From the IMG/VR virus record IMGVR_UViG_3300037054_000148, positions 249,598 through 313,597 of that record: a stretch of DNA of 64,000 nt; one strand, written 5' to 3'. The notes below the pieces were generated by a model. It was not told the DNA's origin, ran no database searches, and saw only the letters and a list, made by a program, of their open reading frames with translations. A program made the translations under genes and the position numbers. Shown in pieces: positions 5,749 through 51,100 of this stretch (its first letter is position 1; each line of letters starts with the position of its first letter).

Positions 5749-5902
5749 AGCAGTTCTGAGAAGTAACGAAAACGCTGAAGGTGAATATTTTTCGTTGAGG
5801 GGCAACAGATTCGTCTGGGCTAAATCAGTCTGGGTGGATGTGGAGGGACGGGTTCATCGGGTCGTTGATGTAGAACTCAACCCAGAAGAGCCCCCTAGAT
5901 AA
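5723..5902 (+). CDS. Small hypothetical protein
   Basis: AAGGAGG RBS before ATG 5723. Confidence 0.55.
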   Translation: MRIPIALLEAVLRSNENAEGEYFSLRGNRFVWAKSVWVDVEGRVHRVVDVELNPEEPPR

Positions 5903-5910
5903 AACAAAAG

Positions 5911-5942
5911 TATACCCAAACTGCCCTGACTTAGGGTATAAT
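5911..5942 (+). promoter_or_regulatory. Putative sigma70-type early promoter
   Basis: GGG-TATAAT at 5934-5942 with upstream ACCCAAA, like other early promoters here. Confidence 0.5.
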
Positions 5943-5959
5943 AAGATATGGGGGATCGC

Positions 5960-6340
5960 ATGACCGACTACAACGTCTACGAAACCGATGCACTGAAGGC
6001 CCTGCTGGATGGAAAGCAGGCGAAACGTAACGACCTGGACTACGAGATCAAGCAGATCAGCACGATCCTCAACACCCGTCTGGCTCAGACCTACCGGTTC
6101 ATCCGGTTCACGGCGATGAAGCAGGGGCAGTTGGACTGCATCAAGACGCTGCGTAACGCTTCCTGTGCCCCAGGCGGGTGCTACATGGGGCTGAAGGAGG
6201 CCAAAGAATTGACCGATCAGCTTAAGGGCCAGTTCATCCGCCCGTTCACCGTGGAGTTCAGGCACCTCAGCGATATGCCGGAGGTCATCCAGGCCCTGCA
6301 CGAATGCTTCGAGTGTGTGCCGGTTGAGGGCGGGGAGTAA
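5960..6340 (+). CDS. Protein with ribosomal L7/L12 C-terminal-like motif
   Basis: CIKTLR...MGLKEAKELTD resembles the L7/L12 CTD motif IK.VR..TGLGLKEAKDLVE. Confidence 0.6.
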   Translation: MTDYNVYETDALKALLDGKQAKRNDLDYEIKQISTILNTRLAQTYRFIRFTAMKQGQLDCIKTLRNASCAPGGCYMGLKEAKELTDQLKGQFIRPFTVEFRHLSDMPEVIQALHECFECVPVEGGE

Positions 6341-7367: not shown

Positions 7368-7569
7368 TCAATTAACTCTGAACCTGACCACCGCAGGGAC
7401 CGATCAGGCTCTAGCCCCCCAGGATATCGCTACGGTGCTGCAAAATGCCGCCAATTTGCTTCTGCAATACGGGTATCAGAATAACATCTTAGTGTATCAG
7501 AATATGGGAATGGTGGGTGATTATAAATTCAAGCCCTCTCCACCTCAAGGTAGCTCAGCACTAAACTAA
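7354..7569 (+). CDS. Small putative virion protein (paralogue A)
   Basis: GGAG RBS; similar to 7600-7812; late-type promoter motif upstream. Confidence 0.65.
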   Translation: MPEIFQLTLNLTTAGTDQALAPQDIATVLQNAANLLLQYGYQNNILVYQNMGMVGDYKFKPSPPQGSSALN

Positions 7570-7599
7570 GCTACCAAATTCTCAGATAGGAGACCACTC

Positions 7600-7812
7600 A
7601 TGTATACCAATTTCCAATTAAATATTTCACTCACGAACGCTGCCGGTTCAGATCTAACCACCACACAGGTGGCTGCAATTCTGACTGCCGCCGCCTCTAC
7701 GGTCAGCACCAACCTCTATACGAATGAGCCATTGATCTATTCCGGCCAGTTAGTAGGCCATTACTGCTGGCAGCCCACTGGATCGGCTGGGACTCCTGGA
7801 AATGGGGATTAA
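7600..7812 (+). CDS. Small putative virion protein (paralogue B)
   Basis: AGGAG RBS; shares FQL...LT.A, L..AA, L.Y, VG.Y with 7354-7569. Confidence 0.65.
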   Translation: MYTNFQLNISLTNAAGSDLTTTQVAAILTAAASTVSTNLYTNEPLIYSGQLVGHYCWQPTGSAGTPGNGD

Positions 7813-7821
7813 GGCCGTCTA

Positions 7822-8262
7822 ATGCGACTCAACGCCAAGTTGCTGTGTAAAACAGCCGATGAAGACACAAAAGAAAAACTTATCGAAAAAGATAAAAATG
7901 AAGATTATGGAATGGAGGCCATTTTTGACTTGCATAATATCCGTAGCGAGCTTATAACAGTTGAGAGAATTAGAAGGTTTGCTTCTGACCTGTGTGATAA
8001 AATATCTATGGAAAAAGGACCAGCGTTTACATGGGGGACAGACTCTAATAAAGACGAAATGAAGAACCCTAAAGCTATGGGGATATCCCACTTGCAGTTT
8101 GTACATAGTTCCTCTATTACCATGCACTGTTTAGATAAAATAGGTAAAGTTTTTATAAATATTTTTAGTTGTAAATCTTTTGACGACAAAATTGCCCGAG
8201 ATTTTGTAATTAAAACTTGGGGTGGTGATATTGTCTCTGAACATGTGATCACCAGAAAATGA
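7822..8262 (+). CDS. speD: S-adenosylmethionine decarboxylase-like pyruvoyl proenzyme
   Basis: YGMEAIFDL, GIS..QF..SSSITMH, FINIFSCKSFD motifs of the AdoMetDC family. Confidence 0.75.
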   Translation: MRLNAKLLCKTADEDTKEKLIEKDKNEDYGMEAIFDLHNIRSELITVERIRRFASDLCDKISMEKGPAFTWGTDSNKDEMKNPKAMGISHLQFVHSSSITMHCLDKIGKVFINIFSCKSFDDKIARDFVIKTWGGDIVSEHVITRK

Positions 8263-8954
8263 GTAAAGACCTACCTCATCCCACTTCTGGTGTTTATAGA
8301 ATAACTAACATTATAGATGGAAAGTTTTATATTGGGTCTTCTCAGAGTATACGAGTTAGATGGAATAGGCATAAACTTTACTTGGGAAGGGGGATTCACC
8401 CCAACCGCTATTTACAGAATGCCTGGAATCTTTATGGGGGGAGTTCATTTGAATTCTGTGTTATTACTTATTGCGAAGTTTCTTTATTAAAAGACAAAGA
8501 ACAGGAACTTTTAGACAAATATTGGGATAACTGTGAAAGTTGTTATAATATATCAAAAGATGCCACATGTCCAATGCGTGGGAGGCATTTAACTGAAGAA
8601 CAACTATATAGAATGCCATTAAGGTTAAAAGGGAGAAAACAGAGTGAGGAATGGGTAGCAAATAGTGCAAAATCTCGTAATGGTTTGAAGCGGTCTGCGG
8701 CTTTTTGTGAAGCTAACTCATTACGTCAAAAGGGAATGAAGCGGCCTACAAACCATTGCAATAGTATATCTAAAGCAACAACGGGCGAGAAAAACCCTAA
8801 TGCAAAAGTTACAGAAGAAATTGTAACAAGTATAAGAACTGATTATAGATTGGGAATGACATATAATCAGTTAAAAAACAAATATGACACTACTTATACT
8901 ATTGCTAGAAATATCTGTTTAAATATAACCTGGAGGGGGTCTGCACATGAATAA
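8259..8954 (+). CDS. Free-standing GIY-YIG homing endonuclease with NUMOD3-like repeats
   Basis: SGVYRITNIIDGKFYIGSS..IR.RW..H, H.NRYLQNAW, GEKNPNAK; AT-rich. Confidence 0.9.
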   Translation: MSKDLPHPTSGVYRITNIIDGKFYIGSSQSIRVRWNRHKLYLGRGIHPNRYLQNAWNLYGGSSFEFCVITYCEVSLLKDKEQELLDKYWDNCESCYNISKDATCPMRGRHLTEEQLYRMPLRLKGRKQSEEWVANSAKSRNGLKRSAAFCEANSLRQKGMKRPTNHCNSISKATTGEKNPNAKVTEEIVTSIRTDYRLGMTYNQLKNKYDTTYTIARNICLNITWRGSAHE

Positions 8955-9957
8955 ACTAGTTGGTGCCGCTATTTTTCCAACTGGCATTGGACTGTCCATT
9001 GGAGGAGATGCTTCGGCTGGTGCAGTTATCCCATTACTTGCTTCTTGTTCGAAAAAGTTAATAGTCAATCCAAATGGAGTGAATGCGAGTGACTTAGTAG
9101 CCTGGGCTGACAACGTTCTCTATGTGGAAGGATCTACGATTGATCGCTTCCTTGAGGGCTCTATTAACCTTAAAGAATGCAGAACTTACAATAAGATTCT
9201 CTGTGTGGTAAATAAGCCGATGTCCATCGCATCTCAAAATGCTGTCAATGCGGCTCGTTGGACGTTGGGTGCGGATATCGAATTGCTGGAGCTTGACACT
9301 CCACTGCGGATGACAGCATTTATCAATCCAGACGGAACGGCTGGGGGTAAACTCTCTGGCCATCACGAGTTAGTTAAGCAGATTAAGGATGCAAATATTG
9401 ATTATGATATCCTTACGGTGCATACTCCAATTGACTGTCCGGATGAAATCGCCAATGCTTACTGGCGACAAGAGATTCTGGTCAATCCCTGGGGTCGAGT
9501 CGAAGCCTTATTAAGTAAATTTCTTTCCTTCGCACTAGACAAACAGGCTGTCCACTCTCCAGTGGAGTTCTTGGCTGACCCACTCTTTAACAGAATTGCG
9601 GTGAAACCGTCCGAGGCCGCTGAAGTAATTTCGAATACGTTTGCTTGGTGTATGTTCAAGGGAACCCACCGAGCCCCGATGATAGACCCGGATCGTAATC
9701 CTCGTAACCTATCCAATCAGGACATGGATTTTCTCATTTCTCCCTCAGACTGTTGGGGCCGACCCCATGATGCCTGCCTTCAGAACCACATTCCCATTCT
9801 AATCGTCAAAGAAAACACCACATGTTTCAAAGATTTCAAGTATCCGATGGTGGCTCTTGAAAGTTCCAGGGTAATCTTTGTTGAAAATTACCTTGAAGCG
9901 GCTGGGATGCTGATGGCTTGGAACGCTGGAATCGACCCACGGATCATCAGGGCTTGA
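8947..9957 (+). CDS. DUF3326-family protein
   Basis: PTGIGLSIGG, NPNGVNASD, YVEGSTIDRF, NPWGRVEALLS, AAE, VENYLEAAG motifs. Confidence 0.75.
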   Translation: MNKLVGAAIFPTGIGLSIGGDASAGAVIPLLASCSKKLIVNPNGVNASDLVAWADNVLYVEGSTIDRFLEGSINLKECRTYNKILCVVNKPMSIASQNAVNAARWTLGADIELLELDTPLRMTAFINPDGTAGGKLSGHHELVKQIKDANIDYDILTVHTPIDCPDEIANAYWRQEILVNPWGRVEALLSKFLSFALDKQAVHSPVEFLADPLFNRIAVKPSEAAEVISNTFAWCMFKGTHRAPMIDPDRNPRNLSNQDMDFLISPSDCWGRPHDACLQNHIPILIVKENTTCFKDFKYPMVALESSRVIFVENYLEAAGMLMAWNAGIDPRIIRA

Positions 9958-11932: not shown

Positions 11933-12348
11933 TCAACCTTGCAAGGCATTTTGACCGTGAACACCCCGTGGCTGACCCAGAGGTTCAGGAGACCGTCAGG
12001 GCTGAACTGACGGAGGCGGGAGTCAAGATAGAGGAGCACGAGTTCCTGCTCGATAGTTGCGGGGAAGTCCCCACCTCTATTATGGGAGTGGCGTGTCACT
12101 GGAGTTTCAGACGGGCGTGGTACTACTGGGTCGCCAAGGGGCCTGGAATCCCCGTGGAGTGGGCCGAGGATTTCAACAAGCGATGGGGGAAGGAAGTAAG
12201 GGCAGAGGGAGATTGTGGATGCCGTGGGCCACTGTTCTGGAACGAGGGCTTTGGGACGGGAAATTACCACATCGATTCCCAAGCCGGTCTGAGTGCTTTT
12301 GTAGAACTTTTGAAGCTGATTCACGTTCCCAGGAAAAAAGAAGACTGA
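11929..12348 (+). CDS. Hypothetical protein
   Basis: AAGGAG RBS; WSFRRAWYYWVAKG, YHIDSQAGL motifs. Confidence 0.7.
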   Translation: MINLARHFDREHPVADPEVQETVRAELTEAGVKIEEHEFLLDSCGEVPTSIMGVACHWSFRRAWYYWVAKGPGIPVEWAEDFNKRWGKEVRAEGDCGCRGPLFWNEGFGTGNYHIDSQAGLSAFVELLKLIHVPRKKED

Positions 12349-12385
12349 GGATTCGAAATATCGAGTATCATCTATACAGAGCACT

Positions 12386-12460
12386 GCGGGTATGATGTAA
12401 TGGTCAGCCTGAAACCTTGCCATGGTTTACGAAGGAGTTCGATTCTCCTTACCCGCTCCA
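12386..12460 (+). tRNA. tRNA-Gly(GCC)
   Basis: Cloverleaf: GCGGGTA/TACCCGC acceptor, AAACC-TTGCCAT-GGTTT anticodon arm, TTCGATT T-loop, U73, encoded CCA. Confidence 0.93.
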
Positions 12461-12479
12461 GTTCCAGATCTTTCTCATT

Positions 12480-12595
12480 TAGACTCTAACAGCACCACCT
12501 ATCTCAAACTGCGATTTGTGGGTTCGATTCCCACCTCTGCGCCTTGCGCGGAGTGGCCAAACTGGAAAAGGCAGCAGTCCCGAAATACGAGTCTA
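12480..12595 (+). ncRNA. Circularly permuted tRNA-like RNA (YrlA-type Y RNA or permuted tRNA)
   Basis: Order: ACTGC(12508)-GATTT-T arm GTGGG/TTCGATT/CCCAC-CTCTGCGC-loop CTT-GCGCGGAG-TG-D arm GCC/AAACTGGAAAA/GGC-A-GCAGT(12578); flanks TAGACTC/GAGTCTA pair. Confidence 0.8.
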
Positions 12596-12604
12596 GTTTT
12601 ATAT

Positions 12605-12680
12605 ATCCGGATGCCTGGAGTGGTATCAGGTCTCTGTCACATGGAGAAACACGTGGGTTCAAATCCCACTCCGGATACCA
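12605..12680 (+). tRNA. tRNA-Val(CAC), atypical
   Basis: ATCCGGA/TCCGGAT acceptor, CCTG/CAGG D-stem, TCTCT-GTCACAT-GGAGA anticodon arm, A73, CCA; no nucleotide 26. Confidence 0.7.
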
Positions 12681-12681
12681 T

Positions 12682-12757
12682 GCACCCGTAACTCAGCGGA
12701 CAGAGTGGTTGGCTTCGAACCAACTGGTCGGGGGTTCGATCCCCTCCGGGTGTACCA
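12682..12757 (+). tRNA. tRNA-Arg(TCG)
   Basis: GCACCCG/CGGGTGT, GTTGG-CTTCGAA-CCAAC, TTCGATC, CCA. Confidence 0.93.
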
Positions 12758-12760
12758 AAT

Positions 12761-12835
12761 GCCCAAGTAGTGATAACGGTAGCACGAAGGTTTCGTACTC
12801 CTTCAGAGACGGTTCGATTCCGTTCTTGGGCTCCA
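12761..12835 (+). tRNA. tRNA-Thr(CGT)
   Basis: GCCCAAG/CTTGGGC, AAGGT-TTCGTAC-TCCTT with U31.U39 mismatch, TTCGATT, CCA. Confidence 0.85.
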
Positions 12836-12851
12836 TTTAAAGGATCAACGC

Positions 12852-13106
12852 ATGAGTCAAGAGGATAAGCATCAGCACATCATCCAGCGTCTCACCTGTC
12901 TTAAGGACTCTTCATTGATCCAGACGGGAATGACGCTGGATTTGTATCAGCGAGAGGGGACGGATCGAAGTGTCTTCTTTGTCAAGATCCCGGCTCTGGC
13001 TGATCAACTTTTCGAGGTGTTCGACAACCATCATGGTTTTTCCTTTGAAGAATGTCGAGCATACATTCGAATTGTGCTAGGTATTAAGGAGCAGCCCTTT
13101 GACTAA
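12852..13106 (+). CDS. Hypothetical protein
   Basis: AAGGA RBS. Confidence 0.6.
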   Translation: MSQEDKHQHIIQRLTCLKDSSLIQTGMTLDLYQREGTDRSVFFVKIPALADQLFEVFDNHHGFSFEECRAYIRIVLGIKEQPFD

Positions 13107-13494
13107 ACAAATGATTGTAATGCGAAAAGATCTCAATATGCGTAAGGGCAAGATGGTGGCTCAGGGGGCTCATGCCTCTGTGGCTGTTTTGCTAAACGCC
13201 GGAGAGTTCGGTGGCGATGGTCCCGTTGATTTTACCCTTCATTTCGAAACTGAAGATGATCCACTTTACTGTTGGATAAGGGGGTTATTCACCAAAATTT
13301 GTGTTTCCGTAGACTCCGAGGAAGAGCTTATGGAAGTATACGGCAAAGCTAAAGAAGCAGGCTTGCTCTGCACTCTCATAACCGACTGTGGTCTGACCGA
13401 GTTCAACGGAGTGCCAACCAAAACTTGCTGTGCGATAGGACCGGCCACTGATGAACAACTTCAGCCAATCACCGGACACCTCAAACTTCTGTAA
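13099..13494 (+). CDS. pth2: Peptidyl-tRNA hydrolase, Pth2 family
   Basis: KQMIVMRKDLNMRKGKMVAQGAHA, KICV.V, ITDCGLTEF, TCCAIGP, ITGHLKLL; AAGGAG RBS with TTG start. Confidence 0.93.
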   Translation: MTKQMIVMRKDLNMRKGKMVAQGAHASVAVLLNAGEFGGDGPVDFTLHFETEDDPLYCWIRGLFTKICVSVDSEEELMEVYGKAKEAGLLCTLITDCGLTEFNGVPTKTCCAIGPATDEQLQPITGHLKLL

Positions 13495-15470: not shown

Positions 15471-16139
15471 ATGAAATCACCCCTTTTTGAAAAGAGTAAA
15501 ACTGCCATTCAAGTCGAATATGAATTTAGCACGACCCAAGCCATCTATGATGGAGCCACTACCAGAGATTTACTAGATTTTATACACAACACAATTCAGG
15601 ATGAAGATGTGTATGTGGATGAAACGGATGGAATCAAAGGCAAGGAACGTAAGCCTCATATTACTCTGCTTTACGGAATCAGAGAACGCAAACCAGATAT
15701 TCCGAAGTTAGAGCAGCTAATTCAGAACCACCCGGCTCTCAATCATGTAAATTGGATTGGGTTGAGTAAATTCGAATCTGTAAAGCATGATGTGTTAGTA
15801 ATCCTAATCGAATCAGAAGAAGCTCAAGAACTTTTCACAGACCTAATGGCTATGTATCCGGATAATGCAAACAGTTTTCCAGATTATCAGCCTCACACCA
15901 CCCTGGCTTACTTGAAGAAGGGAATGGCGGATAAGTATATTGAGAAGTTCTTTGACTCCTTTGTGGACTCTCCGGTTCCGATCAAGCACCTAGAATTTGA
16001 GAATAATGGGGATATTGTGGTCTTCGACCCCAATTCAGCCCAGATGAAAAAGGTCATTACCGCTGCCGAGCTACTCACCAAGAAAAGAGCGGAACTGGAG
16101 CCCAAAACAGCTTACGAACGCTGGGTATCAGGTGATTAA
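15471..16139 (+). CDS. 2H phosphoesterase, T4 gp57B/Acb1-like (candidate anti-CBASS)
   Basis: Two HxT motifs: PHITLLYGI and YQPHTTLAYLKKG. Confidence 0.8.
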   Translation: MKSPLFEKSKTAIQVEYEFSTTQAIYDGATTRDLLDFIHNTIQDEDVYVDETDGIKGKERKPHITLLYGIRERKPDIPKLEQLIQNHPALNHVNWIGLSKFESVKHDVLVILIESEEAQELFTDLMAMYPDNANSFPDYQPHTTLAYLKKGMADKYIEKFFDSFVDSPVPIKHLEFENNGDIVVFDPNSAQMKKVITAAELLTKKRAELEPKTAYERWVSGD

Positions 16140-16968: not shown

Positions 16969-17739
16969 ATGCACACTCCACGCTACGGCTGGCACCCAGA
17001 CTTACCTGATTTCCGTGACTTCCGTTTAACTGCGGCAGCCGCACACACGACCACCCCAGATGTGCTGGATCTCCGTCCAAAGATGCCCGTGGTTTACGAC
17101 CAGGGTGATTTAGGAAGCTGCACTGGTAACTCTAGTGCCGCTGCATTCGAGTACGATTTGATTAGGCAAGGATTGCCTAGCTGGACTCCAAGTCGTCTGG
17201 GCATCTACTATGATGAACGAGTCCTTGAAGGGACTGTCAGCACAGATGCGGGGGCACAAATTCGTGATGCTGTCAAAGTCCTAGCCACGAATGGGGCCGC
17301 ACCTGAGACTTTGTGGCCTTATGTCCCAGCAAATTTCGCTATGGCCCCTCCGGCTGTCTATGTGAAGACGGCTGCTCAGGACTTAGCCCTCCAGTATGCC
17401 CGTGTCGATCAATCTCAGCTTGGAATTGAAGGATGCCTGTCTAAGGGCTATCCGGTTATTTTCGGGTTTACCGTATACTCTTCATTTGAATCAGAGGCCG
17501 TAGCACGGACAGGGGTCATGCCGATGCCCTCCTCCAAGGAAAAATGCTTAGGGGGCCACGCAGTGCTTTGTGTCGGCTACGAGCGTTCCAAGCGGATGTT
17601 CATTATCCGTAACTCATGGGGAGTGGGGTGGGGGGATAAGGGATACTTCTATATGCCTTATAACTACCTACTCAACGCTAACCTAGCTGATGACCTTTGG
17701 GCTCTCTACACGGTCGAAGAGGCAGGTAAGCAAGCCTAG
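16969..17739 (+). CDS. Papain-family (C1) cysteine peptidase
   Basis: DQGDLGSCTGN (Gln/Cys), GGHAVLCVGY (His), IRNSWG (Asn). Confidence 0.93.
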   Translation: MHTPRYGWHPDLPDFRDFRLTAAAAHTTTPDVLDLRPKMPVVYDQGDLGSCTGNSSAAAFEYDLIRQGLPSWTPSRLGIYYDERVLEGTVSTDAGAQIRDAVKVLATNGAAPETLWPYVPANFAMAPPAVYVKTAAQDLALQYARVDQSQLGIEGCLSKGYPVIFGFTVYSSFESEAVARTGVMPMPSSKEKCLGGHAVLCVGYERSKRMFIIRNSWGVGWGDKGYFYMPYNYLLNANLADDLWALYTVEEAGKQA

Positions 17740-17798
17740 GATCTAGACCAGACACAGGGTGGGAAAGTGACTATTCACTTCTAGAAGTGGAGGCTGTT

Positions 17799-18530
17799 AT
17801 GAAACAAGCCAAAGTCAATCTCGATGGAGCAGCCCTTTCTCTACTCCACCCACTAGTGAGCGGGGCCACCACCCTGGCTCTACGCTGCCGTGAGGCACAC
17901 TGGAATGTCAAGGGACCAAATTTCGGTCCTCTCCATGAACTGTTTGGTGACTTTTACGACTTCATGAACGATTGGGCTGACACCCTTGCCGAACGAGTCG
18001 TTCAGCAAGGAGGAGCCGCTTGGGCTCTGGATAGCTATACGGGGCCTGGGCTCATCGGGGACGAGAAGTTTCTACTGGAAAATATCGCTATCGCAGGGAA
18101 TTCCCTGGCTACAATTGTGCATACTACTATCCCTAAGCTAGGGGACGATGAGACTAGCAAGGATGTGCTGATTGAATTTGGCCGAGAGCTTGAGAAATGG
18201 GTTTGGAAGATTGAGGCGCATCTGATGGAGTTTAAACGGTTAGGTGAGGCTAAACCTGAAACAGAAGTAGCGGAAGAGACCATCGCAGGCCCTGTTAAAG
18301 GCACTGGGCGATTCCTCACGGAGGGGGAAATCAGGGCAGCCGCACAGACCCCCACTAAAGACTTCAGCGCCATCGTAACAGCTAGATCTATTCTGGTTAA
18401 ATCTGCATCAGGGCACATTTATGCATTTGATGAGAACGTGATGCCGATTTCCAAGGCAAAAGATCCTTCCGAACAGGATGAGGCTCAGCGGTGGTTACAG
18501 GAAAACTTCAATGAGGTTCTTGGCGATTGA
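17799..18530 (+). CDS. dps: Dps/ferritin-like protein with C-terminal extension
   Basis: AHWNVKGPNFGPLHELF...WADTLAERV Dps signature; GGAGG RBS. Confidence 0.82.
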   Translation: MKQAKVNLDGAALSLLHPLVSGATTLALRCREAHWNVKGPNFGPLHELFGDFYDFMNDWADTLAERVVQQGGAAWALDSYTGPGLIGDEKFLLENIAIAGNSLATIVHTTIPKLGDDETSKDVLIEFGRELEKWVWKIEAHLMEFKRLGEAKPETEVAEETIAGPVKGTGRFLTEGEIRAAAQTPTKDFSAIVTARSILVKSASGHIYAFDENVMPISKAKDPSEQDEAQRWLQENFNEVLGD

Positions 18531-18562
18531 CCAGAACGCAGTAACATCCCTAAGAGGCCGTA

Positions 18563-18892
18563 ATGGAAATCTCCAAGAAATCTGAATTGCTCAACCATGA
18601 TTTGGTCAACATGCTCCAGACAAACGTCGAAGGGCAATTGAGTTTCAAGAATATGAACAAAATCGAGTGGAACAACCTTAGCCCAGAGTCCAAGGCCGAG
18701 TTCTTTATGAGAAATGTGTTTCACGATGGTGTGGACCCCCGCATAAAAGATCAGATTAACGGGGAAATTGACAAACGGGTAGACGTTGCAAAGAACGACC
18801 TACTCCAAAAGGTGGATAACGAAGTCCGCAACGGTGCGATGTCTGAAGTGATCAAACAACTCGTTTCAGAAATCAATTTTACGGAGATTTGA
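18563..18892 (+). CDS. Hypothetical protein
   Basis: GAGG RBS. Confidence 0.6.
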   Translation: MEISKKSELLNHDLVNMLQTNVEGQLSFKNMNKIEWNNLSPESKAEFFMRNVFHDGVDPRIKDQINGEIDKRVDVAKNDLLQKVDNEVRNGAMSEVIKQLVSEINFTEI

Positions 18893-37946: not shown

Positions 37947-40472
37947 ATGTCTTCCACTAATCCAGTTCCCTACATCCCGCTCTTAGAGGGCTATTCAGGA
38001 TATGTCTATCTCACAAATAGCACGACAGTCACAGGAATAAATTATGCCACTGGAGGGGACCAAGCGGCCACTCAGCCACTAGCCCTTCAGAATAATGTAA
38101 TTGGGTTTTCAAAGGCTCTGGGATCTGGACAGGGAAGATTACAGATCGCTTACGACTCTGTAAGTGACACCACCCAGCTTCAATATATTGGTGGGAGTCC
38201 TACCTCTCCAAATACCTGGGATGCCGCTATGGCTGATAATTTCCCTGTCTCCATTTCACTCACTGACATTGCTTACATAAATGCAGCCAACCAATATGAT
38301 TTGTACACATTTGTGCCCCCCGCCTCTGGGGCAAATGGAGCCGGTGCGGGAGGCTCTCAATTTACCTTTGAAGTGTGGGCTCTTTGTCAACCACAAATCG
38401 CCTCTATTTCCCCGACCAGTATTACGGCGGATGGGTCGGCTCACATTATTACAATTTCTTTGGCTCGAAGGCTTCACAGTTCTCAATCCCCAACTATTTC
38501 ACCCTCCATCACTGGGAGTGGGGTCACGCTTGGCACCCCTACTCCAATAACTAATGCGAACGGGCAGTTGACAGGATGGAGTATGACTGCCACCGCATTA
38601 GCCGCTCAGCCTACTTCTACGCAAAGTATCACTTTCGCTTTGACTGAGAATGCCACTTATCTGAGTGGGGATTCAATCGTCACTAACGCGCTGACCTACC
38701 CATCTAGCACTCAGAGTCTAGGTGTCATCTCAGAGGTCTCTTCATCCATCCCTATTGCCGCCACAGCCGCTACCCTGGTTGGGGGCTCCGGAACAGACGT
38801 TACCCATGGCCTAGTCACTGCCACATCCGGTGTTATCGCCGGAGGATTGACGGCTCAGGTTACCCTTACTTCTGGCACTCTATCAGATTTAACGGCTCCG
38901 GTAAACGTTGTCGCTCTTCCTTACAACTTTGCCACAGGGACGACTTCTTACACGAACCCGACCTTGAAGGCCATTAATAACCGCACCACTATTGCAACAA
39001 TGACTCCAGTCGGAGCCCCCACCATTGTAATTAATGCTCAAGGGAATAACGTTTATCAACAGCAATACTACGCAAATTTTGATACTTCTGCTCTGCTGTT
39101 GGATCCTTCTGGGAGCGCCTACCCTCAATGGCAAATCGGTTACTCCGCAACTGGCCCCACCGTCCCCTATACGAATTGGTTTGGAACCTATGTTAATGGT
39201 AATCTCACTGGGAACACCGCAGCTTACACAGTGTACGCCCTAGTTGGTGGAGATGAGTATGCCTACTCATCGGGTGTGTGGGAGGATGCGGCTGGGAACC
39301 CAGCCATAAACTTGTATTTCAGCGGCACAGTCCAGTTTTATATCTCCCCAAATTGGAACCCGGAAAATGTTATAAACTCTGCTCCAGAAGTGCTTACCTT
39401 GATCCAATACCAAATAGATGGAGGCACACTAACCTCTTCCAACTTAGCTACAACTTATACCGCAGGGAATGGGGATATCGCCATGGGTCTCGCATCCATT
39501 GATACGACAAAGTTCTCAGTGCCGACAGGGAACCACTCAATCACCTGGAAGTTGATCACCGATCTGGATACTGGTGCCACACAAACTCAAGTGCAAACCG
39601 CCACTGTAGCCTTCTCTACAAATCAAAGTGCTATTGGTGGGGCAATCCCTGATTACACCGTCTCCAGCACTTCCGCAACGACTCAATCCTTCGTGCAAAA
39701 CCAAAGCTCTTCTGTCTCCTGGGTACTCACTTACAAACCCAATATTCTATTCGCTGGCAGCTTGAGTTTCGGCATTACGGGACTTCCCTCTACTGGGACG
39801 ACCTTTGTGTTCACCCCTTCCACCCTGAGCCTTCTGCCAGGAGGGACCGCACTCAACACCACACTAACCCTAACAGCCTCAAGCGCACCAGTTGGGAACT
39901 ACCCCATCACCATTCACGCCACATCTGGGGCTTCAGATGACGCTCCTTTCAACGCGCTCTTATCCGTAGAGGCTCAGGTTATTGCTCCTGCCCCCCCTTA
40001 TCAGGAAACCGGCCGCTGCTGCTTCTTAGCTGGCACGAAGATAACAATGGAAAATGGGGTATTAAAAGACATAAAGGAACTAGAGGTAGGAGATAGGGTT
40101 GCCTCCTACGATATTTCTTCTAAAACCATGACCGTAGGGACTGTGGAGTTTATCCATAATCCTATCCGGAGTCATATCAATCATGTACAGTTTGAGGATG
40201 GAAAGGTGCTAAATGTTACCTCTGATCACCCACTTTACACAACTGAAGGTTGGAAATCATTAGATCCGGAATCAACCCAAGTTGGGTATGGCATGACCTG
40301 TAGGAGATTAGCTGAGGGGGATCAGGTCATGAATTTAAAGGGGGATTTCCTTACCATCACCAATATTGAATTTGAAGCTGGAGAGTTCCAAACATACGCT
40401 CCTGGAAGAGTGTCCGACTGCTCTACCTACTTTGCTGATGGCCTCTTAGCCCACAACTGTGGGGGCGGCTAG
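37947..40472 (+). CDS. Virion protein with C-terminal Hint (intein-like) domain
   Basis: CFLAGTKI (40020), TSDHP block B, YFADGLLAHN (40457) followed by CGGG-stop. Confidence 0.88.
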   Translation: MSSTNPVPYIPLLEGYSGYVYLTNSTTVTGINYATGGDQAATQPLALQNNVIGFSKALGSGQGRLQIAYDSVSDTTQLQYIGGSPTSPNTWDAAMADNFPVSISLTDIAYINAANQYDLYTFVPPASGANGAGAGGSQFTFEVWALCQPQIASISPTSITADGSAHIITISLARRLHSSQSPTISPSITGSGVTLGTPTPITNANGQLTGWSMTATALAAQPTSTQSITFALTENATYLSGDSIVTNALTYPSSTQSLGVISEVSSSIPIAATAATLVGGSGTDVTHGLVTATSGVIAGGLTAQVTLTSGTLSDLTAPVNVVALPYNFATGTTSYTNPTLKAINNRTTIATMTPVGAPTIVINAQGNNVYQQQYYANFDTSALLLDPSGSAYPQWQIGYSATGPTVPYTNWFGTYVNGNLTGNTAAYTVYALVGGDEYAYSSGVWEDAAGNPAINLYFSGTVQFYISPNWNPENVINSAPEVLTLIQYQIDGGTLTSSNLATTYTAGNGDIAMGLASIDTTKFSVPTGNHSITWKLITDLDTGATQTQVQTATVAFSTNQSAIGGAIPDYTVSSTSATTQSFVQNQSSSVSWVLTYKPNILFAGSLSFGITGLPSTGTTFVFTPSTLSLLPGGTALNTTLTLTASSAPVGNYPITIHATSGASDDAPFNALLSVEAQVIAPAPPYQETGRCCFLAGTKITMENGVLKDIKELEVGDRVASYDISSKTMTVGTVEFIHNPIRSHINHVQFEDGKVLNVTSDHPLYTTEGWKSLDPESTQVGYGMTCRRLAEGDQVMNLKGDFLTITNIEFEAGEFQTYAPGRVSDCSTYFADGLLAHNCGGG

Positions 40473-48088: not shown

Positions 48089-48138
48089 GCTCAGGCTCAA
48101 ACTCCCCGACTATGGGTATCAATATTGAGAGTGTGAGC

Positions 48139-51100
48139 ATGAAGAGAGCATTTGTCCTACCTGAGCAGGGTGTCATTAATATCTATTTCATCCGAGATGA
48201 GCGGCCCCGAATCCAGTGGCTGATTGACTTGGGTATTCCTCGATTTTCAGTATTCATGCTAGAACTCCCTATCCCTTTGGACAACCCAGGACACACCCAG
48301 ATTGTATTTCATGAAGGGACTGCACTTATCCTAGAACAAATCAAGGCTTTCTTATCCGAGACTGAGTTCGGAGAGGATGCGGGGGTCATCAAGGCGATGA
48401 TGCAGGCTATCAAGCAGACCGAGATCGACTTCTACGGAACTGAATTGATGTACGGTTATGAAATCCTGTTCCCTTTGAGCCAGCAATTCTACGATCTAGT
48501 TCATGAGCGAATTGTCAATCAGAAGACGGCCAGTGAAGACTCTGGTGCATGGAGCAGGCTTTATGATGATAACGTCAGTGATGAAGAGTTCTTAGAACGT
48601 CATGCAGGACGGGAAGAGGGCATCTCCAAATCTGTTTGGAGAGCACCGGACACAAATAAGCGTATGATGGTGGACCTGGGCAAACCAGTGCAGAAACGAG
48701 ATAAACAGGAATTAAATGACGCTCGTAAGATAATCGACCGCTACAAGCAGACCATCTACAAGAGCACCCCAGGCCCTTTGTTCGTCATCCTATACGACCG
48801 CAATGGGCTTCCACGAGGCGTTAGTCGTGTAACCAATAAGGGACTGACCAAATGGGCCGATGGCTCTGAAGTACCTAGGGAACTTTTAACTGCATTGATT
48901 GACATCTTTGGGGAACAGGACGCCGATCAAGTCAAAGTGGCTGAAGAGAAGCCTAAAAATATCCCAAAGGATCTGCTCAAAAAACTTCCCGGCATTCACG
49001 AAATATCACCAGAAGGTCAGGATGAAGGGGAGGGGGATAACAATTGGGAGGAGCCTAATGGCTACTCTCAGACCGTCAGGGATCGCTTAAAGCTCCTGAG
49101 AGAGCGAACCGGAATGGAGCTTCCAGTTTTAGGGGAAGGGTCTTCCCGTATGGTCGTCGGGGTAAATGAACATGTTGCAATCAAGCTAGCGATCAATCAG
49201 CCCGGTGTGGCTCAGAACAAAGCCGAACTCAGAATGTATGAGAAGGTTGAGGATTGCACTATTATCACTCGCATTTTTTACTATGATACTGAGTTTCACT
49301 GGCTCGTAGTTGAGCGAGTCCTAAGAGGGGCCACCTATTCAGATTTCGAACGATATGGAGCAACCGACGCCTACAACTTTTGTAAAAAAGTAGAGCGTGG
49401 GGGAACAGAATTTCTTACAGATAGGCAGGCAGTGAAATCTCTTCAGTTCTTATGCCAGACACTTGGTGTTAAATGGTGGGACATTGATCGAGAGAGCCAG
49501 TGGGGGCTGGTCGAACGTAGGGGTGAGCGGTATCCGGTCTTGGTAGACTACGGACTTGATGAAGAGGTGGCCCGACAACACTACAGCAGCAAACTTGCCG
49601 CAGGGTGGGGTAGTTTCATCAATGGTGAATACTGGGTAGATGGCGACTCAGCGAACAACTATGCAGAATGCAGTGGAGACGGGGACTATACCCACGAAAC
49701 CTATGCCAGAGAACAGATTCTCAATGACAAGTGGGACCAAATTCTTAGTGCTTGTCAGCGTCATCTTCAGGAGGCCCACGAAGAAGAAGATGACAACAAC
49801 CCAGGAGAGGTGGAGGAAGAGTGGCGAAAGCTCCATGCGATGAAGTATGGGGAGCCTGACTTTCCAATGGAAGATGTGTTCTTTACCCTCATCTGGGGCT
49901 ATGTTTCGTTAGAAGAGTGCGATGCCATCTTCAATGGTGAATACGACATGTTCAAGAATGAGGTTCGGGAATTCTTCATGCGATTCTACAACCAGATCCG
50001 GGTCGTGGACAAAAATTTCGAAGTGTGGAAACTCACCCCTCGAAACCTTGACACCATCATCGATTGGGTATTTAATGAGAGTGGGCTGGATGAATCCGAC
50101 TTAGCTCAGATGAAGGATGAGGTTTATATTGAGCAATACGAAGGTGGCAGAAAATACGCAGGGATTCCAATTGGGGAGCTTCTAAACATGAAGAACCCAG
50201 GCGAAGTTTGGCGTTATCAAGGAATGACCGTGGCCTCGAAGCAGGCTGCGATGGTTGAACTTCCACACGATAAGGAAGTCAAGCTCCCCCTCTACATGCT
50301 GAAGAAACTCAAACAAATGGCCCAAAAGTTTGATCCCCAGGCTGACTTCCGCTTTGTCGGGGGCTGCGTACGTGATATGCTCCTGGACCGCAAACCAAAG
50401 GATTTCGATGTCGTCACCAACACCACGGCTGACACTTTACAGAAGATGGGTTTGGAGAACGTGGGAAAGGCTTTTCCTGTCTACCTCTACCATGACCCCA
50501 CGTATGGCCAGATTGAAATCGCTGTGGCTCGTTCGGAAGAAAAGACTGGGGTGGGGCATAAGGACTTTGATATCGTTCCAACCGGCAATTTCGAAGGAGA
50601 TATGGTTCGCAGAGACCTGAATGTGAACGCCATGATGGTGGATGCGGATGGAAAACTCTTCGGCCCCACTGAAGCCCTACAGAACATCAAGGACAAGACC
50701 CTCCAGAATGTCAGTGAGAAGTTCGCTGAGGATGCGTTGCGCGTTTTCCGAGCCGCACGATTCAGTGCTCAGTTTGGGTCAGAGTGGAGGGTCAGTCCCC
50801 AACTGGTGGACATGATGCACCGGATGCAACCTGAACTTCAATATCTTCCGGCTGATCGTATCAGGGAAGAAACTAAACGTGCGCTGGTCGGTAAAGTTCC
50901 CATGCGCTTCTTTGAAGTGCTGCGTGAGGGGGGTTGCCTGGAACCCTGGTTCAGCGAGTTCGATCAAAACTGGAGTCAAATAGCTGAATCGGTCAACTAC
51001 GGTCATCAGAATGGCTGGGATTTTGACTTGCAGATCGTTGGGATTGAATCACAGCTTCCCATTCCGGATAGCCTGAATAACCGGCTTGGTCTGTCGAATC

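What the first reader, a model, noticed from the sequence alone, without database searches (positions are those of the whole stretch)
12461..12604. Circularly permuted tRNA-like RNA hidden in the tRNA cluster (Y RNA/YrlA-like or permuted tRNA)
Seen: the spacer between tRNA-Gly and tRNA-Val holds a complete tRNA body in permuted order. The 3' half comes first (ACTGC 12508-12512, variable loop GATTT, T arm GTGGG-TTCGATT-CCCAC, acceptor strand CTCTGCGC), then a 3-nt loop CTT, then the 5' half (GCGCGGAG, U8-G9, D arm with conserved GG, GCAGT ending 12578). The acceptor stem is 8 bp, the anticodon stem GCAGT/ACTGC is perfect, and the flanks TAGACTC (12480-12486) and GAGTCTA (12589-12595) close a 116-nt structure. 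Known: bacterial YrlA Y RNAs have this topology (T arm before D arm, loop-closed acceptor stem, anticodon stem extended into a Ro60-binding stem with a CGAA-containing 3' strand); here that strand reads GTCCCGAAAT. True permuted tRNA genes are known from some algae and an archaeon. Inference: either (a) a phage Y RNA released by processing of the flanking tRNAs, with no Ro60/TROVE gene in this window, possibly hijacking host Rsr-PNPase or decoying tRNA-targeting defences; or (b) a permuted tRNA that, joined at 32/33, gives a canonical CU-CUC-AA loop and would need CCA addition, which this phage encodes. Standard tRNA finders would probably miss it.
Basis: partly seen in the sequence, partly recalled or inferred. 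Interest (0 to 1): 0.9.

Follow-up and report, generated by a model that had tools for sequence, protein, structure and literature searches.

The report
Phage Y-like RNA with tRNA-shaped core
The spacer between two phage tRNA genes encodes a conserved, abundantly expressed small RNA with a permuted tRNA-like core, belonging to a very large family of phage RNAs that travel with a Ro60-like protein, and its ends appear to be joined into a circle.

Summary
Window 12477-12601 encodes a ~125-nt RNA: a 7-bp outer helix (12480-86/12589-95) encloses a T arm, a loop-closed 8-bp acceptor hairpin, a D arm and an anticodon-like stem.

All six helices covary across 45 phage homologues. Rfam YrlA matches only the tRNA-like core (25 bits; gathering score 69).

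The invariant part is not the tRNA body. It is a frame: helix + nn + ACAGCA(A) ... complementary strand + G.

This frame marks a large family, mostly 50-70-nt units, often in tandem arrays and in tRNA clusters. The family is tightly linked to a ~500-aa DUF2828/DUF7788 protein whose predicted fold is Ro60 (TROVE ring + vWA). In phage Bas63 this protein (gp130) counters the Ppl defence system.

The permuted-tRNA reading is not supported.

No Ro60-like gene lies from about 9 kb upstream to 51 kb downstream of the element.

At least 19 metatranscriptomes hold the RNA. In two of four runs examined, contigs join 12600/12601 back to 12477, giving a 124-125-nt circle. Circularity is supported but not proven.

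Verdict: a new variant of a known kind (phage Y RNA / YrlA-like).

The parts
12386..12460 (+). tRNA-Gly(GCC) with encoded CCA; upstream neighbour in the same precursor
   Evidence: ARAGORN; Rfam tRNA 51.6 bits; RNA contig X17 12325-12601 runs through it
12461..12476 (+). 5' spacer, absent from the joined RNA form
   Evidence: Junction contigs start the unit at 12477
12477..12479 (+). 5' tail AUU of the mature/joined RNA
   Evidence: Joint 12601->12477 (X20) and 12600->12477 (X25)
12480..12486 (+). Frame helix, 5' strand UAGACUC
   Evidence: Pairs with 12589-95; 98.7% paired, 6 of 7 pairs with double changes; free positions complementary in 105/139 pattern matches
12487..12495 (+). nn + ACAGCA(A)-type box (UA-ACAGCA-C); proposed recognition box for a Ro60-like protein
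   Evidence: Invariant in relatives. ACAGCAA is the top strand-specific 7-mer upstream of Ro60-like genes, 48 sense vs 2 antisense of 75
12496..12507 (+). Remainder of the 5' internal loop (CACCUAUCUCAA); variable in the family
12508..12512 (+). Anticodon-like stem, 5' strand (pairs with 12574-78)
   Evidence: Helices 2-3: 4 of 4 core pairs with double changes, 94.6% paired
12513..12517 (+). Variable-loop equivalent GAUUU
   Evidence: Aligned to the YrlA V region
12518..12534 (+). T arm GUGGG-UUCGAUU-CCCAC
   Evidence: helix 4 (99.5% paired); T54:A58 in 44/45
12535..12553 (+). Acceptor-like 8-bp hairpin closed by CUU; no CCA
   Evidence: Helix 5: 8 of 8 pairs with double changes; compensatory changes in L010
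12554..12573 (+). U8-G9, D arm (GCC / AAACUGGAAAA / GGC), A26
   Evidence: helix 6, 100% paired; G18:psi55 in 40/45 and G19:C56 in 31/45
12574..12578 (+). Anticodon-like stem, 3' strand GCAGU
12579..12588 (+).
   Evidence: CAAAACAU in L010; CGAA present in 2 of 45
12589..12595 (+). Frame helix, 3' strand GAGUCUA
12596..12601 (+). Conserved unpaired G followed by the 3' tail UUUU(A); 3' end of the joined RNA at 12600 or 12601
   Evidence: G in 87% of 157 units; junction coordinates; contig X17 ends at 12601
12602..12604 (+). 3' spacer before tRNA-Val, absent from the joined form
12605..12835 (+). tRNA-Val(CAC), tRNA-Arg(UCG), tRNA-Thr(CGU), all with encoded CCA; downstream part of the same cluster
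   Evidence: RNA contig X27 12470-12689 is colinear across the element/tRNA-Val boundary

Best explanation
The element is a phage Y-RNA-like small RNA of the YrlA type. It is transcribed within the tRNA-cluster precursor and cut out about 3 nt before and 5-6 nt after a 7-bp terminal helix, giving a stable 124-125-nt RNA. The terminal helix, the adjacent single-stranded ACAGCA(A) box and the 3' unpaired G form the constant 'frame' of a large RNA family. I infer that the frame is the binding site of a Ro60-like protein (TROVE ring + vWA; Pfam DUF2828 + DUF7788). The variable interior, here a permuted tRNA-like module (T arm, loop-closed acceptor hairpin, D arm, anticodon-like stem), would be the effector module. 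As proposed for YrlA, it would present a tRNA shape to tRNA-binding enzymes or nucleases. The resulting particle would act in phage RNA surveillance or repair, or in counter-defence. A fraction of the RNA has its two ends covalently joined (circular). That would protect it from exonucleases, and the joining is plausibly done by an RtcB- or Rnl-type ligase. Shown here: the structure and its covariation, membership of the frame family, the family's linkage to the Ro60-fold protein, the presence of the RNA in many RNA libraries, and head-to-tail junction contigs. Inferred: protein binding, the processing enzymes, the ligase, true circularity and the biological role.
For: Structure and conservation. 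Frame family: the 16-mer recurs in unrelated AT-rich phage tRNA clusters with different interiors. Of 139 pattern matches, 105 have both free helix positions complementary and 80 lie within 300 nt of a same-strand tRNA. Protein link: 16 of 59 deduplicated large ORFs near elements carry DUF2828+DUF7788. Reciprocally, 80 protein-anchored IMG/VR loci give 157 sense, 9 antisense and 6 shuffled frame hits, with 62 of 80 loci positive. In genome assemblies the counts are 194, 8 and 5, with 70 of 80 positive. The Ro60-like gene is present in 19 of 70 real loci against 1 of 29 chance loci. ACAGCAA is the top unbiased 7-mer. Protein fold: AF2 model pLDDT 82.5 and pTM 0.82. The six best Foldseek PDB matches are full-length Ro60/TROVE structures, including phage phiLo Ro60 (E 1e-8 to 1e-6). 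The vWA MIDAS motif DxSxS is invariant. Mycobacteriophage annotations call the protein 'Ro-like RNA binding protein'. Bridge to YrlA: in Jobypre three frame units follow the Ro-like gene, and the middle one is matched by Rfam YrlA over model positions 1-114 (39.3 bits) and by my model. Function: Bas63 gp130 is this protein and counters Ppl (preprint 10.1101/2024.10.10.617714). Bas63 has two unannotated frame units, one with the same tRNA-like interior. phiLo Ro60 binds adjacent Y-like RNAs and host PNPase (PMC12135203). Expression: at least 19 RNA runs hold 64-91% of the element's sampled words. RNA contigs cover only about 12325-12764, with nothing over the flanking ORFs. Joined ends: X20 has a 155-nt contig, which is a 125-nt circle plus the 30-nt k-1 overlap, and X25 has the 12600->12477 junction. 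Five DNA contigs hold one colinear copy each, and the junction is absent from IMG/VR. RNA-repair genes (RtcB, RNA ligase, RlaP, phosphoesterases) recur beside the Ro60-like gene.
Against: No Ro60-like gene (DUF2828, DUF7788 or TROVE) lies within the window or the 9 kb upstream of it, so the element sits at least 12 kb from any such gene. About 240 kb of the 313.6-kb genome was not seen. Binding of the frame by the protein is inferred from co-occurrence only. The element misses Rfam's YrlA gathering score (25 against 69 bits) and lacks the GNCGAA box. Circularity rests on assembled contigs from two runs. A few reverse-transcriptase template-switch reads on an abundant linear RNA could close a de Bruijn unitig in the same way. 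The X25 contig stops 21 nt past the junction, which suggests low junction coverage. My two first DNA tests of the junction used a mistyped pattern and are void. The A2 alignment was fitted to the model, and most of its members were collected with a pattern that fixes part of the frame.
Confidence: 0.7

Rival explanations
1. A tRNA-mimic decoy that works without any Ro60-like protein. In this reading the frame is a processing and circularisation signal, and the stable (circular) tRNA-shaped RNA soaks up tRNA-targeting defence nucleases or tRNA-modifying enzymes.
For: No Ro60-like gene lies within about 60 kb. The element sits inside a tRNA cluster beside PTH2 and a 2H phosphoesterase. Junction contigs exist. 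Only 19 of 70 RNA-anchored loci show the protein in the DNA fetched.
Against: Most family units are 50-70 nt and have no tRNA-like body, so the constant frame cannot be explained by tRNA mimicry. The strand-specific linkage to the Ro60-fold gene is very strong in three collections. The fetched loci are short, so a missing gene is weak evidence.
Confidence: 0.15
2. A true circularly permuted tRNA gene. The precursor is circularised, as in Cyanidioschyzon merolae, opened at the acceptor stem, given CCA, and used as tRNA-Glu(CUC).
For: ARAGORN calls the rotated circle tRNA-Glu(CUC) with a 47-nt insertion in the anticodon loop. A circular form is suggested. The corresponding triplets in the window (CUC) and in L010 (UUC) are both Glu anticodons. 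A PolyA_pol/CCA-type nucleotidyltransferase domain exists in the window (48112-54687).
Against: The observed junction joins the outer tails and leaves about 54 nt inside the 'anticodon loop'. No junction at 32/33 was seen. I found no bulge-helix-bulge motif by inspection, and the window encodes no splicing endonuclease. The acceptor is closed by 3 nt without CCA, while all four neighbouring tRNAs encode CCA. Homologues lack the anticodon stem (L020) or any tRNA body. ARAGORN's choice of loop with free intron placement is weak evidence.
Confidence: 0.03
3. A decaying tandem duplication of a tRNA gene: the 3' half of one copy followed by the 5' half of the next, with no function.
For: A 5-nt CAGCA match between the upstream spacer and the D/anticodon junction hints at an old duplication (by inspection). 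Tandem-tRNA junctions in other phages score weakly with my model.
Against: Compensatory changes keep every helix. The element has a conserved position in diverged relatives, a 3-nt acceptor loop with no CCA or spacer, abundant RNA, and membership of a family with a conserved non-tRNA frame.
Confidence: 0.02
4. The head-to-tail junction is not an RNA circle. It would reflect either a strain with two tandem DNA copies (arrays are typical of this family) or reverse-transcriptase template switching on an abundant linear RNA.
For: Family units often stand in arrays with 8-13-nt spacers, the same length as the joined tails here. Only contigs were available, not reads. The X25 contig ends 21 nt after the junction. 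DNA sampling is thin, with five colinear contigs.
Against: Two runs from different studies give junctions 1 nt apart (124 and 125 nt). That fits trimmed RNA ends better than two independent duplications. In X20 the unitig is closed with no branch into either flank, whereas a tandem precursor would be cut at the junction as efficiently as at the flanks. The corrected junction string is absent from IMG/VR DNA.
Confidence: 0.35

Closest known systems
YrlA (Rfam RF02553), the tRNA-like bacterial and phage Y RNA partner of Rsr/Ro60 (Chen et al. 2014, PMC4201824)
   Same: Both have a terminal 5'-3' stem and an internal loop carrying a short conserved box. The module order is the same: V loop, T arm, loop-closed acceptor-like hairpin, D arm, closed by an anticodon-like stem. 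The tRNA tertiary partners are conserved. Both are encoded beside a Ro60-fold protein at family level and occur in phages.
   Different: The Rfam score is 25 bits against a gathering score of 69, and only model positions 23-85 match. There is no GNCGAAN0-1G box; the box here is ACAGCA(A). YrlA's second 7-bp stem is absent (consensus seen). The partner protein family is DUF2828/DUF7788, not Pfam TROVE. In this genome the partner is not within 4 kb. The element is embedded in a tRNA cluster. There is possible end-joining.
Thermus phage phiLo phiRo60 with Yrl1/Yrl2 (NAR 2025, PMC12135203)
   Same: A phage-encoded Ro60-fold protein with small stem/internal-loop RNAs encoded next to it. A role in hijacking host PNPase or escaping defence has been proposed. 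phiLo Ro60 structures are among the best fold matches of the partner protein.
   Different: The phiLo RNAs were picked by a CGAA motif and have no described tRNA-like module. The protein families are only fold-related (11-17% identity).
Bas63 gp130, a Ro60-like anti-Ppl factor (PhageMaP preprint 10.1101/2024.10.10.617714)
   Same: gp130 is a member of the same DUF2828-type protein family and lies directly upstream of a tRNA block. That block holds two frame units, one with the same tRNA-like interior.
   Different: The preprint only guessed that some annotated tRNAs might be Y RNAs. The units found here are unannotated spacers, one of them under an antisense CDS. The window's phage has no gp130 homologue nearby.
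Permuted tRNA genes of Cyanidioschyzon merolae and other algae and archaea
   Same: The 3' half precedes the 5' half in the gene, and a circular RNA form is involved.
   Different: Those are circularised at a BHB motif by the splicing endonuclease and ligase, then opened at the acceptor end to give a normal tRNA. Here the acceptor end is a closed 3-nt loop without CCA, the junction lies beyond an extra 7-bp helix, and a 54-nt insert would remain.
Phage T4 stable RNAs rnaC and rnaD (species 1 and 2) in the T4 tRNA cluster
   Same: Stable small RNAs of unknown function, co-transcribed and processed with phage tRNAs. rnaC has a T-arm-like 3' part.
   Different: They have no frame helix or ACAGCA box arrangement and give no hit with my model. 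This is an analogy only.

Membership tests
YrlA (Rfam RF02553; Chen et al. 2014) | tRNA-like module in the order T arm, loop-closed acceptor-like stem, D arm | tested here: met
   Rfam alignment to model 23-85; covariation in 45 homologues; conserved T54:A58, G18:psi55 and G19:C56
YrlA (Rfam RF02553; Chen et al. 2014) | Score at or above the curated gathering threshold (69 bits) | tested here: not met
   25.0 bits for the window; 39.3 bits for the Jobypre sister element; no YrlA hit at gathering score in 14 family loci
YrlA (Rfam RF02553; Chen et al. 2014) | GNCGAAN0-1G box near the 5' end (putative Rsr site) | tested here: not met
   The 5' side carries UAACAGCA. GNCGAA occurs anywhere in only 3 of 45 homologues, and CGAA in the 3' loop in only 2 of 45. 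It is lost in L010
YrlA (Rfam RF02553; Chen et al. 2014) | Encoded within 4 kb of a Ro60 orthologue on the same strand | tested here: not met
   No TROVE or DUF2828 gene from about -9 kb to +51 kb. At family level the criterion is met for a Ro60-fold paralogue
Y RNA in the broad sense (Ro60-bound small RNA) | 5'-3' terminal stem plus internal loop with a conserved box | tested here: met
   Frame helix with covariation; ACAGCAA box
Y RNA in the broad sense (Ro60-bound small RNA) | Physical binding to a Ro60-family protein | not testable with these tools
   Only genomic linkage to a protein with a Ro60 fold is shown
ACAGCA-frame RNA family defined here (partner: DUF2828/DUF7788 Ro60-like protein) | 7-bp helix (consensus WAGACnC) + nn + ACAGCA(A) ... 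complementary strand + unpaired G | tested here: met
   Window 12480-12596 fits exactly
ACAGCA-frame RNA family defined here (partner: DUF2828/DUF7788 Ro60-like protein) | Partner gene in the same genome | tested here: inconclusive
   Not in the roughly 73 kb examined of a 313.6-kb genome
Permuted tRNA gene (C. merolae type) | Leader and trailer form a BHB motif; the circular intermediate is opened at the acceptor end to give a CCA-ended tRNA with a normal anticodon loop | tested here: not met
   No BHB by inspection of 12461-12486 and 12589-12610. The junction is at the outer tails. The acceptor loop is 3 nt without CCA. A 47-54-nt insert remains in the anticodon loop
Canonical tRNA (RF00005 / ARAGORN) | Colinear cloverleaf | tested here: not met
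   Not called by ARAGORN or Rfam in the genomic order
drum RNA (RF02958), another small RNA found near phage tRNAs | Match to the drum consensus | tested here: not met
   The drum hit in L036 has an unrelated consensus. There is no drum hit on the window

The most novel reading that the evidence does not exclude
The helix + ACAGCA(A) frame defines a very widespread class of Y-like RNAs in phages and prophages that has not been described. They stand in tandem arrays and in tRNA clusters, and include well-studied phages such as Felix O1/Bas63, Listeria P100-like phages and mycobacteriophages. They would be the RNA partners of the DUF2828-type Ro60 homologue, and at least some are circularised in vivo, giving an exonuclease-proof circular tRNA mimic used in counter-defence.
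Probability: 0.35. Interest if true: 0.8.

Novelty: new variant of a known kind. Interest (0 to 1): 0.62.

Why it matters
Y RNAs and Ro60 are known from animals to bacteria, but what they do in phages is only beginning to be studied. This element led to a simple sequence signature, a stem plus the ACAGCA(A) box. That signature finds the likely RNA partners of a Ro60-like protein present in about 700 cultured phage genomes and in hundreds of metagenomic phages and bacterial assemblies. One of those proteins, Bas63 gp130, has a measured anti-defence phenotype, but its RNA partner had only been guessed at. The signature gives testable candidates in an E. coli K-12 phage. It also explains many unannotated 'spacers' in phage tRNA clusters and flags probable mis-annotated antisense ORFs. 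If the joined ends are real, this would be a natural circular tRNA mimic in a bacterial virus. I found no report of that for Y RNAs.

Tried and rejected
1. Megablast and blastn of the region against cultured phages found no relative; only the tRNAs matched.
2. An exact core 25-mer in IMG/VR found only near-identical copies, so it gave no covariation.
3. The PTH2 neighbour used as a synteny anchor found the same three contigs.
4. The hits of my model in phage Phosso and in T4 are tandem-tRNA junctions, which are false positives.
5. T4 rnaC and rnaD do not share the frame.
6. drum RNA has an unrelated consensus.
8. The junction patterns were mistyped (an extra T) and could not match, so both results are void.
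9. The colinear control in metagenome contigs found only 2 contigs, so DNA sampling is thin.
10. The Chen 2014 supplements are not held in the library.
11. The Levitt 15:48 covariation could not be judged because the loop alignment is unreliable.
12. The 518-aa ORF straddling the window's left edge is not Ro60-like.
13. More distant relatives of the lineage (L229, L230) lack the element at the syntenic place.
14. A profile search of PDB sequences found only a weak vWA hit. The Ro60 relationship needed the fold search.
15. A sigma-70 promoter scan around the cluster found nothing.
Full report
1. WHAT IS THERE

The window is the last 64 kb of a 313,597-bp peat-metagenome jumbo-phage contig. SLT lysozymes point to a bacterial host.

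ARAGORN and Rfam find four tRNAs, all with encoded CCA: Gly 12386-12460, Val 12605-12680, Arg 12682-12757 and Thr 12761-12835. Neither tool finds anything in the 144-nt Gly/Val spacer.

In order along the strand:
- outer helix UAGACUC 12480-86 with GAGUCUA 12589-95;
- anticodon-like stem 12508-12 with 12574-78;
- T arm 12518-34;
- an 8-bp acceptor-like hairpin closed by CUU, 12535-53;
- U8-G9, then the D arm 12556-72.

A sensitive Rfam scan gives YrlA at 12510-12576. The score is 25.0 bits against a gathering score of 69, with E = 0.005, and only model positions 23-85 match, which is the tRNA-like module. ARAGORN calls a tRNA body only after the sequence is rotated and a 47-nt 'intron' is allowed. 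Folding energy alone is unremarkable (z = -1.4).

2. IT IS CONSERVED AND IT COVARIES

Homologues of the phage-specific gene just upstream led to relatives with 73% and 70% protein identity. These keep the same order: Gly, element, Val, Arg, Thr.

My covariance model R1 finds the element there at 133 and 81 bits. The acceptor hairpin and the D stem carry compensatory changes. The outer helix and the following UAACAGCA are invariant.

3. THE CONSTANT PART IS A FRAME, NOT THE tRNA BODY

The invariant 16-mer also occurs in unrelated AT-rich phage tRNA clusters, with completely different interiors. One of those phages has a second copy with a doubly compensated helix (UAGACCU/AGGUCUA) and again a T arm, closed acceptor and D arm inside.

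A pattern that leaves two helix positions free returned more than 118 IMG/VR loci. Of the 139 matches:
- 105 have both free positions complementary, against about 14% expected by chance;
- many different base pairs are used at those positions;
- 80 lie within 300 nt of a same-strand tRNA, most within 20 nt;
- 81 of the 105 contain a T-loop word.

R1 aligned 45 members. In that alignment 95.5% of cells are paired, against 65% when shuffled and 35-45% when slid. Twenty-five of 28 pairs change on both sides, and all six helices are supported. One caveat applies: the alignment is fitted to the model, and many members were collected with a pattern that fixes part of the frame.

No Rfam family reaches its gathering score on these elements. 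drum RNA and T4 rnaC/rnaD are unrelated.

4. THE PARTNER PROTEIN

Sixteen of 59 deduplicated large ORFs next to elements carry DUF2828 + DUF7788 and are about 500 aa long. An RtcB and an RNA ligase also appear among these ORFs.

The C-terminal half of the protein is a vWA domain with an invariant DxSxS MIDAS motif. The AlphaFold model is confident (pLDDT 82.5, pTM 0.82). Its six best PDB matches are full-length Ro60/TROVE structures: Xenopus Ro, human Ro60 and Thermus phage phiLo Ro60 (probability 1.00, E 1e-8 to 1e-6, TM about 0.5). A sequence profile alone did not see this relationship.

The protein occurs in 697 cultured phage records. Mycobacteriophage annotators already call it 'Ro-like RNA binding protein'.

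Reciprocal tests, starting from loci chosen only by the protein:

| Test | Result |
|---|---|
| 80 IMG/VR loci, relaxed frame search | 157 sense, 9 antisense, 6 shuffled; 62 of 80 loci positive, mostly tandem arrays just upstream of the gene |
| 80 loci from bacterial and archaeal assemblies | 194 sense, 8 antisense, 5 shuffled; 70 of 80 loci positive |
| RNA-anchored loci containing the gene | 19 of 70 real loci, 1 of 29 chance loci |
| Unbiased 7-mer count upstream of the gene (75 loci) | ACAGCAA 48 sense vs 2 antisense; GGTTCGA 36 vs 0 |

The consensus from 157 units is WAGACnC + nn + ACAGCA-A ... GnGUCUU + G. Ninety-one of the 157 units are only 50-69 nt long, so the tRNA-like insert defines a subset.

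5. BRIDGES TO WHAT IS KNOWN

Chen et al. 2014 defined YrlA by three features: adjacency to Ro60 (within 4 kb, same strand), a 5' GNCGAAN0-1G box, and the T/AS/D module. They reported YrlA in 22 phages.

In mycobacteriophage Jobypre three frame units follow the Ro-like gene. The middle unit has the tRNA-like interior. Rfam YrlA matches it over model positions 1-114 at 39.3 bits, still below the gathering score, and R1 matches it at E = 8e-7.

The YrlA consensus has a different box and an extra 7-bp stem. CGAA occurs in only 2 of 45 homologues in the 3' loop, and GNCGAA in only 3 of 45 anywhere. I therefore file the window's RNA as a YrlA-like Y RNA of a distinct variant, not as a member of RF02553.

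Phage Ro60 with adjacent Y-like RNAs that recruits host PNPase is documented for phiLo (PMC12135203). Iyer and colleagues note TROVE proteins with a tRNA-like partner in jumbo-phage RNA repair (PMC7824862).

In Bas63, gp130 is this protein (bas63_0130). The PhageMaP preprint shows that it counters the Ppl defence system and guesses that some annotated tRNAs are Y RNAs. I find two unannotated frame units in its tRNA block:
- a 58-nt mini unit;
- a 126-nt unit with the same T arm, closed acceptor and D arm interior, which lies under an antisense 'hypothetical protein' CDS.

Felix O1-like phage garuso has four units. Listeria phage LMTA-34 has three, with an RtcB gene 1.3 kb from the Ro-like gene. 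RNA ligase, RlaP, Band-7 and phosphoesterase genes recur nearby. I found no paper describing the ACAGCA frame.

6. THIS GENOME

The window holds exactly one frame unit. It has no TROVE, DUF2828, RtcB or Rnl gene.

The 9 kb upstream on the source contig also lack these genes. The 518-aa ORF that straddles the window's edge is unrelated to the Ro60-like family. About 240 kb of the genome remain unseen.

The neighbours of the element are a PTH2 peptidyl-tRNA hydrolase, a methyltransferase-like protein and a 2H phosphoesterase (LigT/Acb1-like). A PolyA_pol/CCA-type domain sits inside a 2191-aa polyvalent protein.

7. RNA EVIDENCE

At least 19 peat, permafrost and bioreactor metatranscriptomes hold 64-91% of the element's sampled words. 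That is more than they hold of the flanks.

I laid the contigs of four runs from different studies on 12150-13050:
- RNA contigs cover only about 12325-12764. Nothing covers the flanking ORFs, so DNA carry-over is unlikely.
- X17's contig is 12325-12601 and X27's is 12470-12689. Both are colinear with the genome, as expected of a precursor.
- X20's 155-nt contig reads 12563..12601 joined to 12477..12592. That is a closed 125-nt unitig plus the 30-nt k-1 overlap.
- X25's contig reads 12409..12600 joined to 12477..12497, a 124-nt version.

The ends therefore lie 3 nt before and 5-6 nt after the frame helix.

Five DNA contigs hold a single colinear copy each. The corrected junction string is absent from IMG/VR.

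One correction is needed.

Because only contigs could be examined, a few template-switch reads on an abundant linear RNA could also close the unitig. I put true circularity at roughly 60%.

8. MECHANISM

Shown here:
- a conserved, covarying RNA;
- its membership of the frame family;
- the family's linkage to a Ro60-fold protein;
- its presence in RNA libraries;
- head-to-tail junction contigs.

Inferred:
- release from the tRNA precursor, with RNase P cutting at the tRNA-Val 5' end, 3' trimming back to 12600/1, and an endonucleolytic cut at 12476|12477;
- binding of the frame by the Ro60-like protein;
- the tRNA-like module acting as a tether or decoy, as proposed for YrlA;
- ligation by an RtcB- or Rnl-type enzyme;
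- a role in RNA surveillance or repair, or in counter-defence.

9. RIVALS

- A Ro60-independent tRNA-mimic decoy: about 0.15.
- A true permuted tRNA-Glu: about 0.03. The junction is in the wrong place, the acceptor is closed without CCA, and many family members have no tRNA body.
- A decayed tandem duplication: about 0.02. Covariation and expression refute it.

10. VERDICT

The permuted-tRNA reading is not supported. The element is a new variant of a known kind, and it points to a large, apparently undescribed RNA family with testable members in model phages.

Noticed in passing
window 8259-8954: A GIY-YIG endonuclease gene sits between the AdoMet-decarboxylase-like gene (7822-8262) and the DUF3326 gene (8947-9957). 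In relative L008 those two genes are directly adjacent. GC falls to 0.41 here. This looks like a homing-endonuclease insertion.
   Followed up: partly
window 48112-54687: A 2191-aa polyvalent protein combines a PolyA_pol/CCA-type nucleotidyltransferase head and RNA-binding domain (aa 747-951), ART-PolyVal (ADP-ribosyltransferase) and DUF7178. Whether it adds CCA is unknown.
   Followed up: no
window 15471-16139: A 2H phosphoesterase (2'-5' RNA ligase superfamily / Acb1-like) lies 3 kb downstream of the tRNA cluster. It is syntenic in relatives and forms part of a 540-aa protein in L010. It could act on cyclic-phosphate RNA ends or on cyclic-nucleotide signals.
   Followed up: partly
window 13099-13494: A PTH2-type peptidyl-tRNA hydrolase lies immediately after the tRNA cluster and is conserved in all close relatives.
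   Followed up: partly
window 37947-40472: An 841-aa structural-module protein ends in a Hint/intein-like (PT-HINT, AXH) domain, aa 691-837. The neighbouring giant ORFs (2266 and 1715 aa) carry He_PIG Ig-like repeats.
   Followed up: no
L231:1-2588 (-), source contig about 240.7-243.3 kb, upstream of the window: A protein of more than 860 aa has C2c1/Cas12-type RuvC-like and Cas12f1-like TNB domains. It is a TnpB/Cas12-like nuclease in a jumbo phage.
   Followed up: no
L036:2541-2667, 7558-8229, 12269-12780: One phage tRNA cluster (28 tRNAs in 14.6 kb) also carries drum, ROOL and GOLLD RNAs together with a frame unit. A ROOL-like hit (88.5 bits, below its gathering score) also lies next to the Ro-like gene of Listeria phage LMTA-34 (L225:1488-2039).
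   Followed up: no
L228:5888-6162 (Bas63, bas63_0137 and bas63_0138): Two short antisense 'hypothetical protein' CDSs are annotated in a gap of the Bas63 tRNA block. bas63_0137 (5888-6040) overlaps the 126-nt frame unit on the other strand and is probably a mis-annotation. bas63_0138 (6052-6162) lies just beyond the unit.
   Followed up: partly
L045:964-1085 and L139:2504-2667: Rfam tRNA hits of 122 and 164 nt match the full model. These are phage tRNAs with long insertions, either introns or embedded elements.
   Followed up: no
L124:1469-1582 (-): A frame unit whose interior is a colinear, not permuted, tRNA-like sequence (Rfam tRNA 48 bits, full model). The frame can therefore enclose tRNA-like bodies in either order.
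   Followed up: partly
L229:19759-20184 and 17549-18649: A distant relative of the window's phage lineage encodes a tmRNA and an IS605 OrfB/TnpB next to tRNAs.
   Followed up: no
window 12621: A T>C variant in the tRNA-Val D region appears in RNA contigs of two runs and in the IMG/VR contig L002. This is strain variation, not editing.
   Followed up: partly
L234, L236, L291 (genome contigs): The DUF2828-type Ro60-like gene, with frame units upstream in L234 and L236, also occurs on contigs binned as Promethearchaeota (Asgard) and other archaea. This may reflect viral contigs in MAGs or a wider host range.
   Followed up: no
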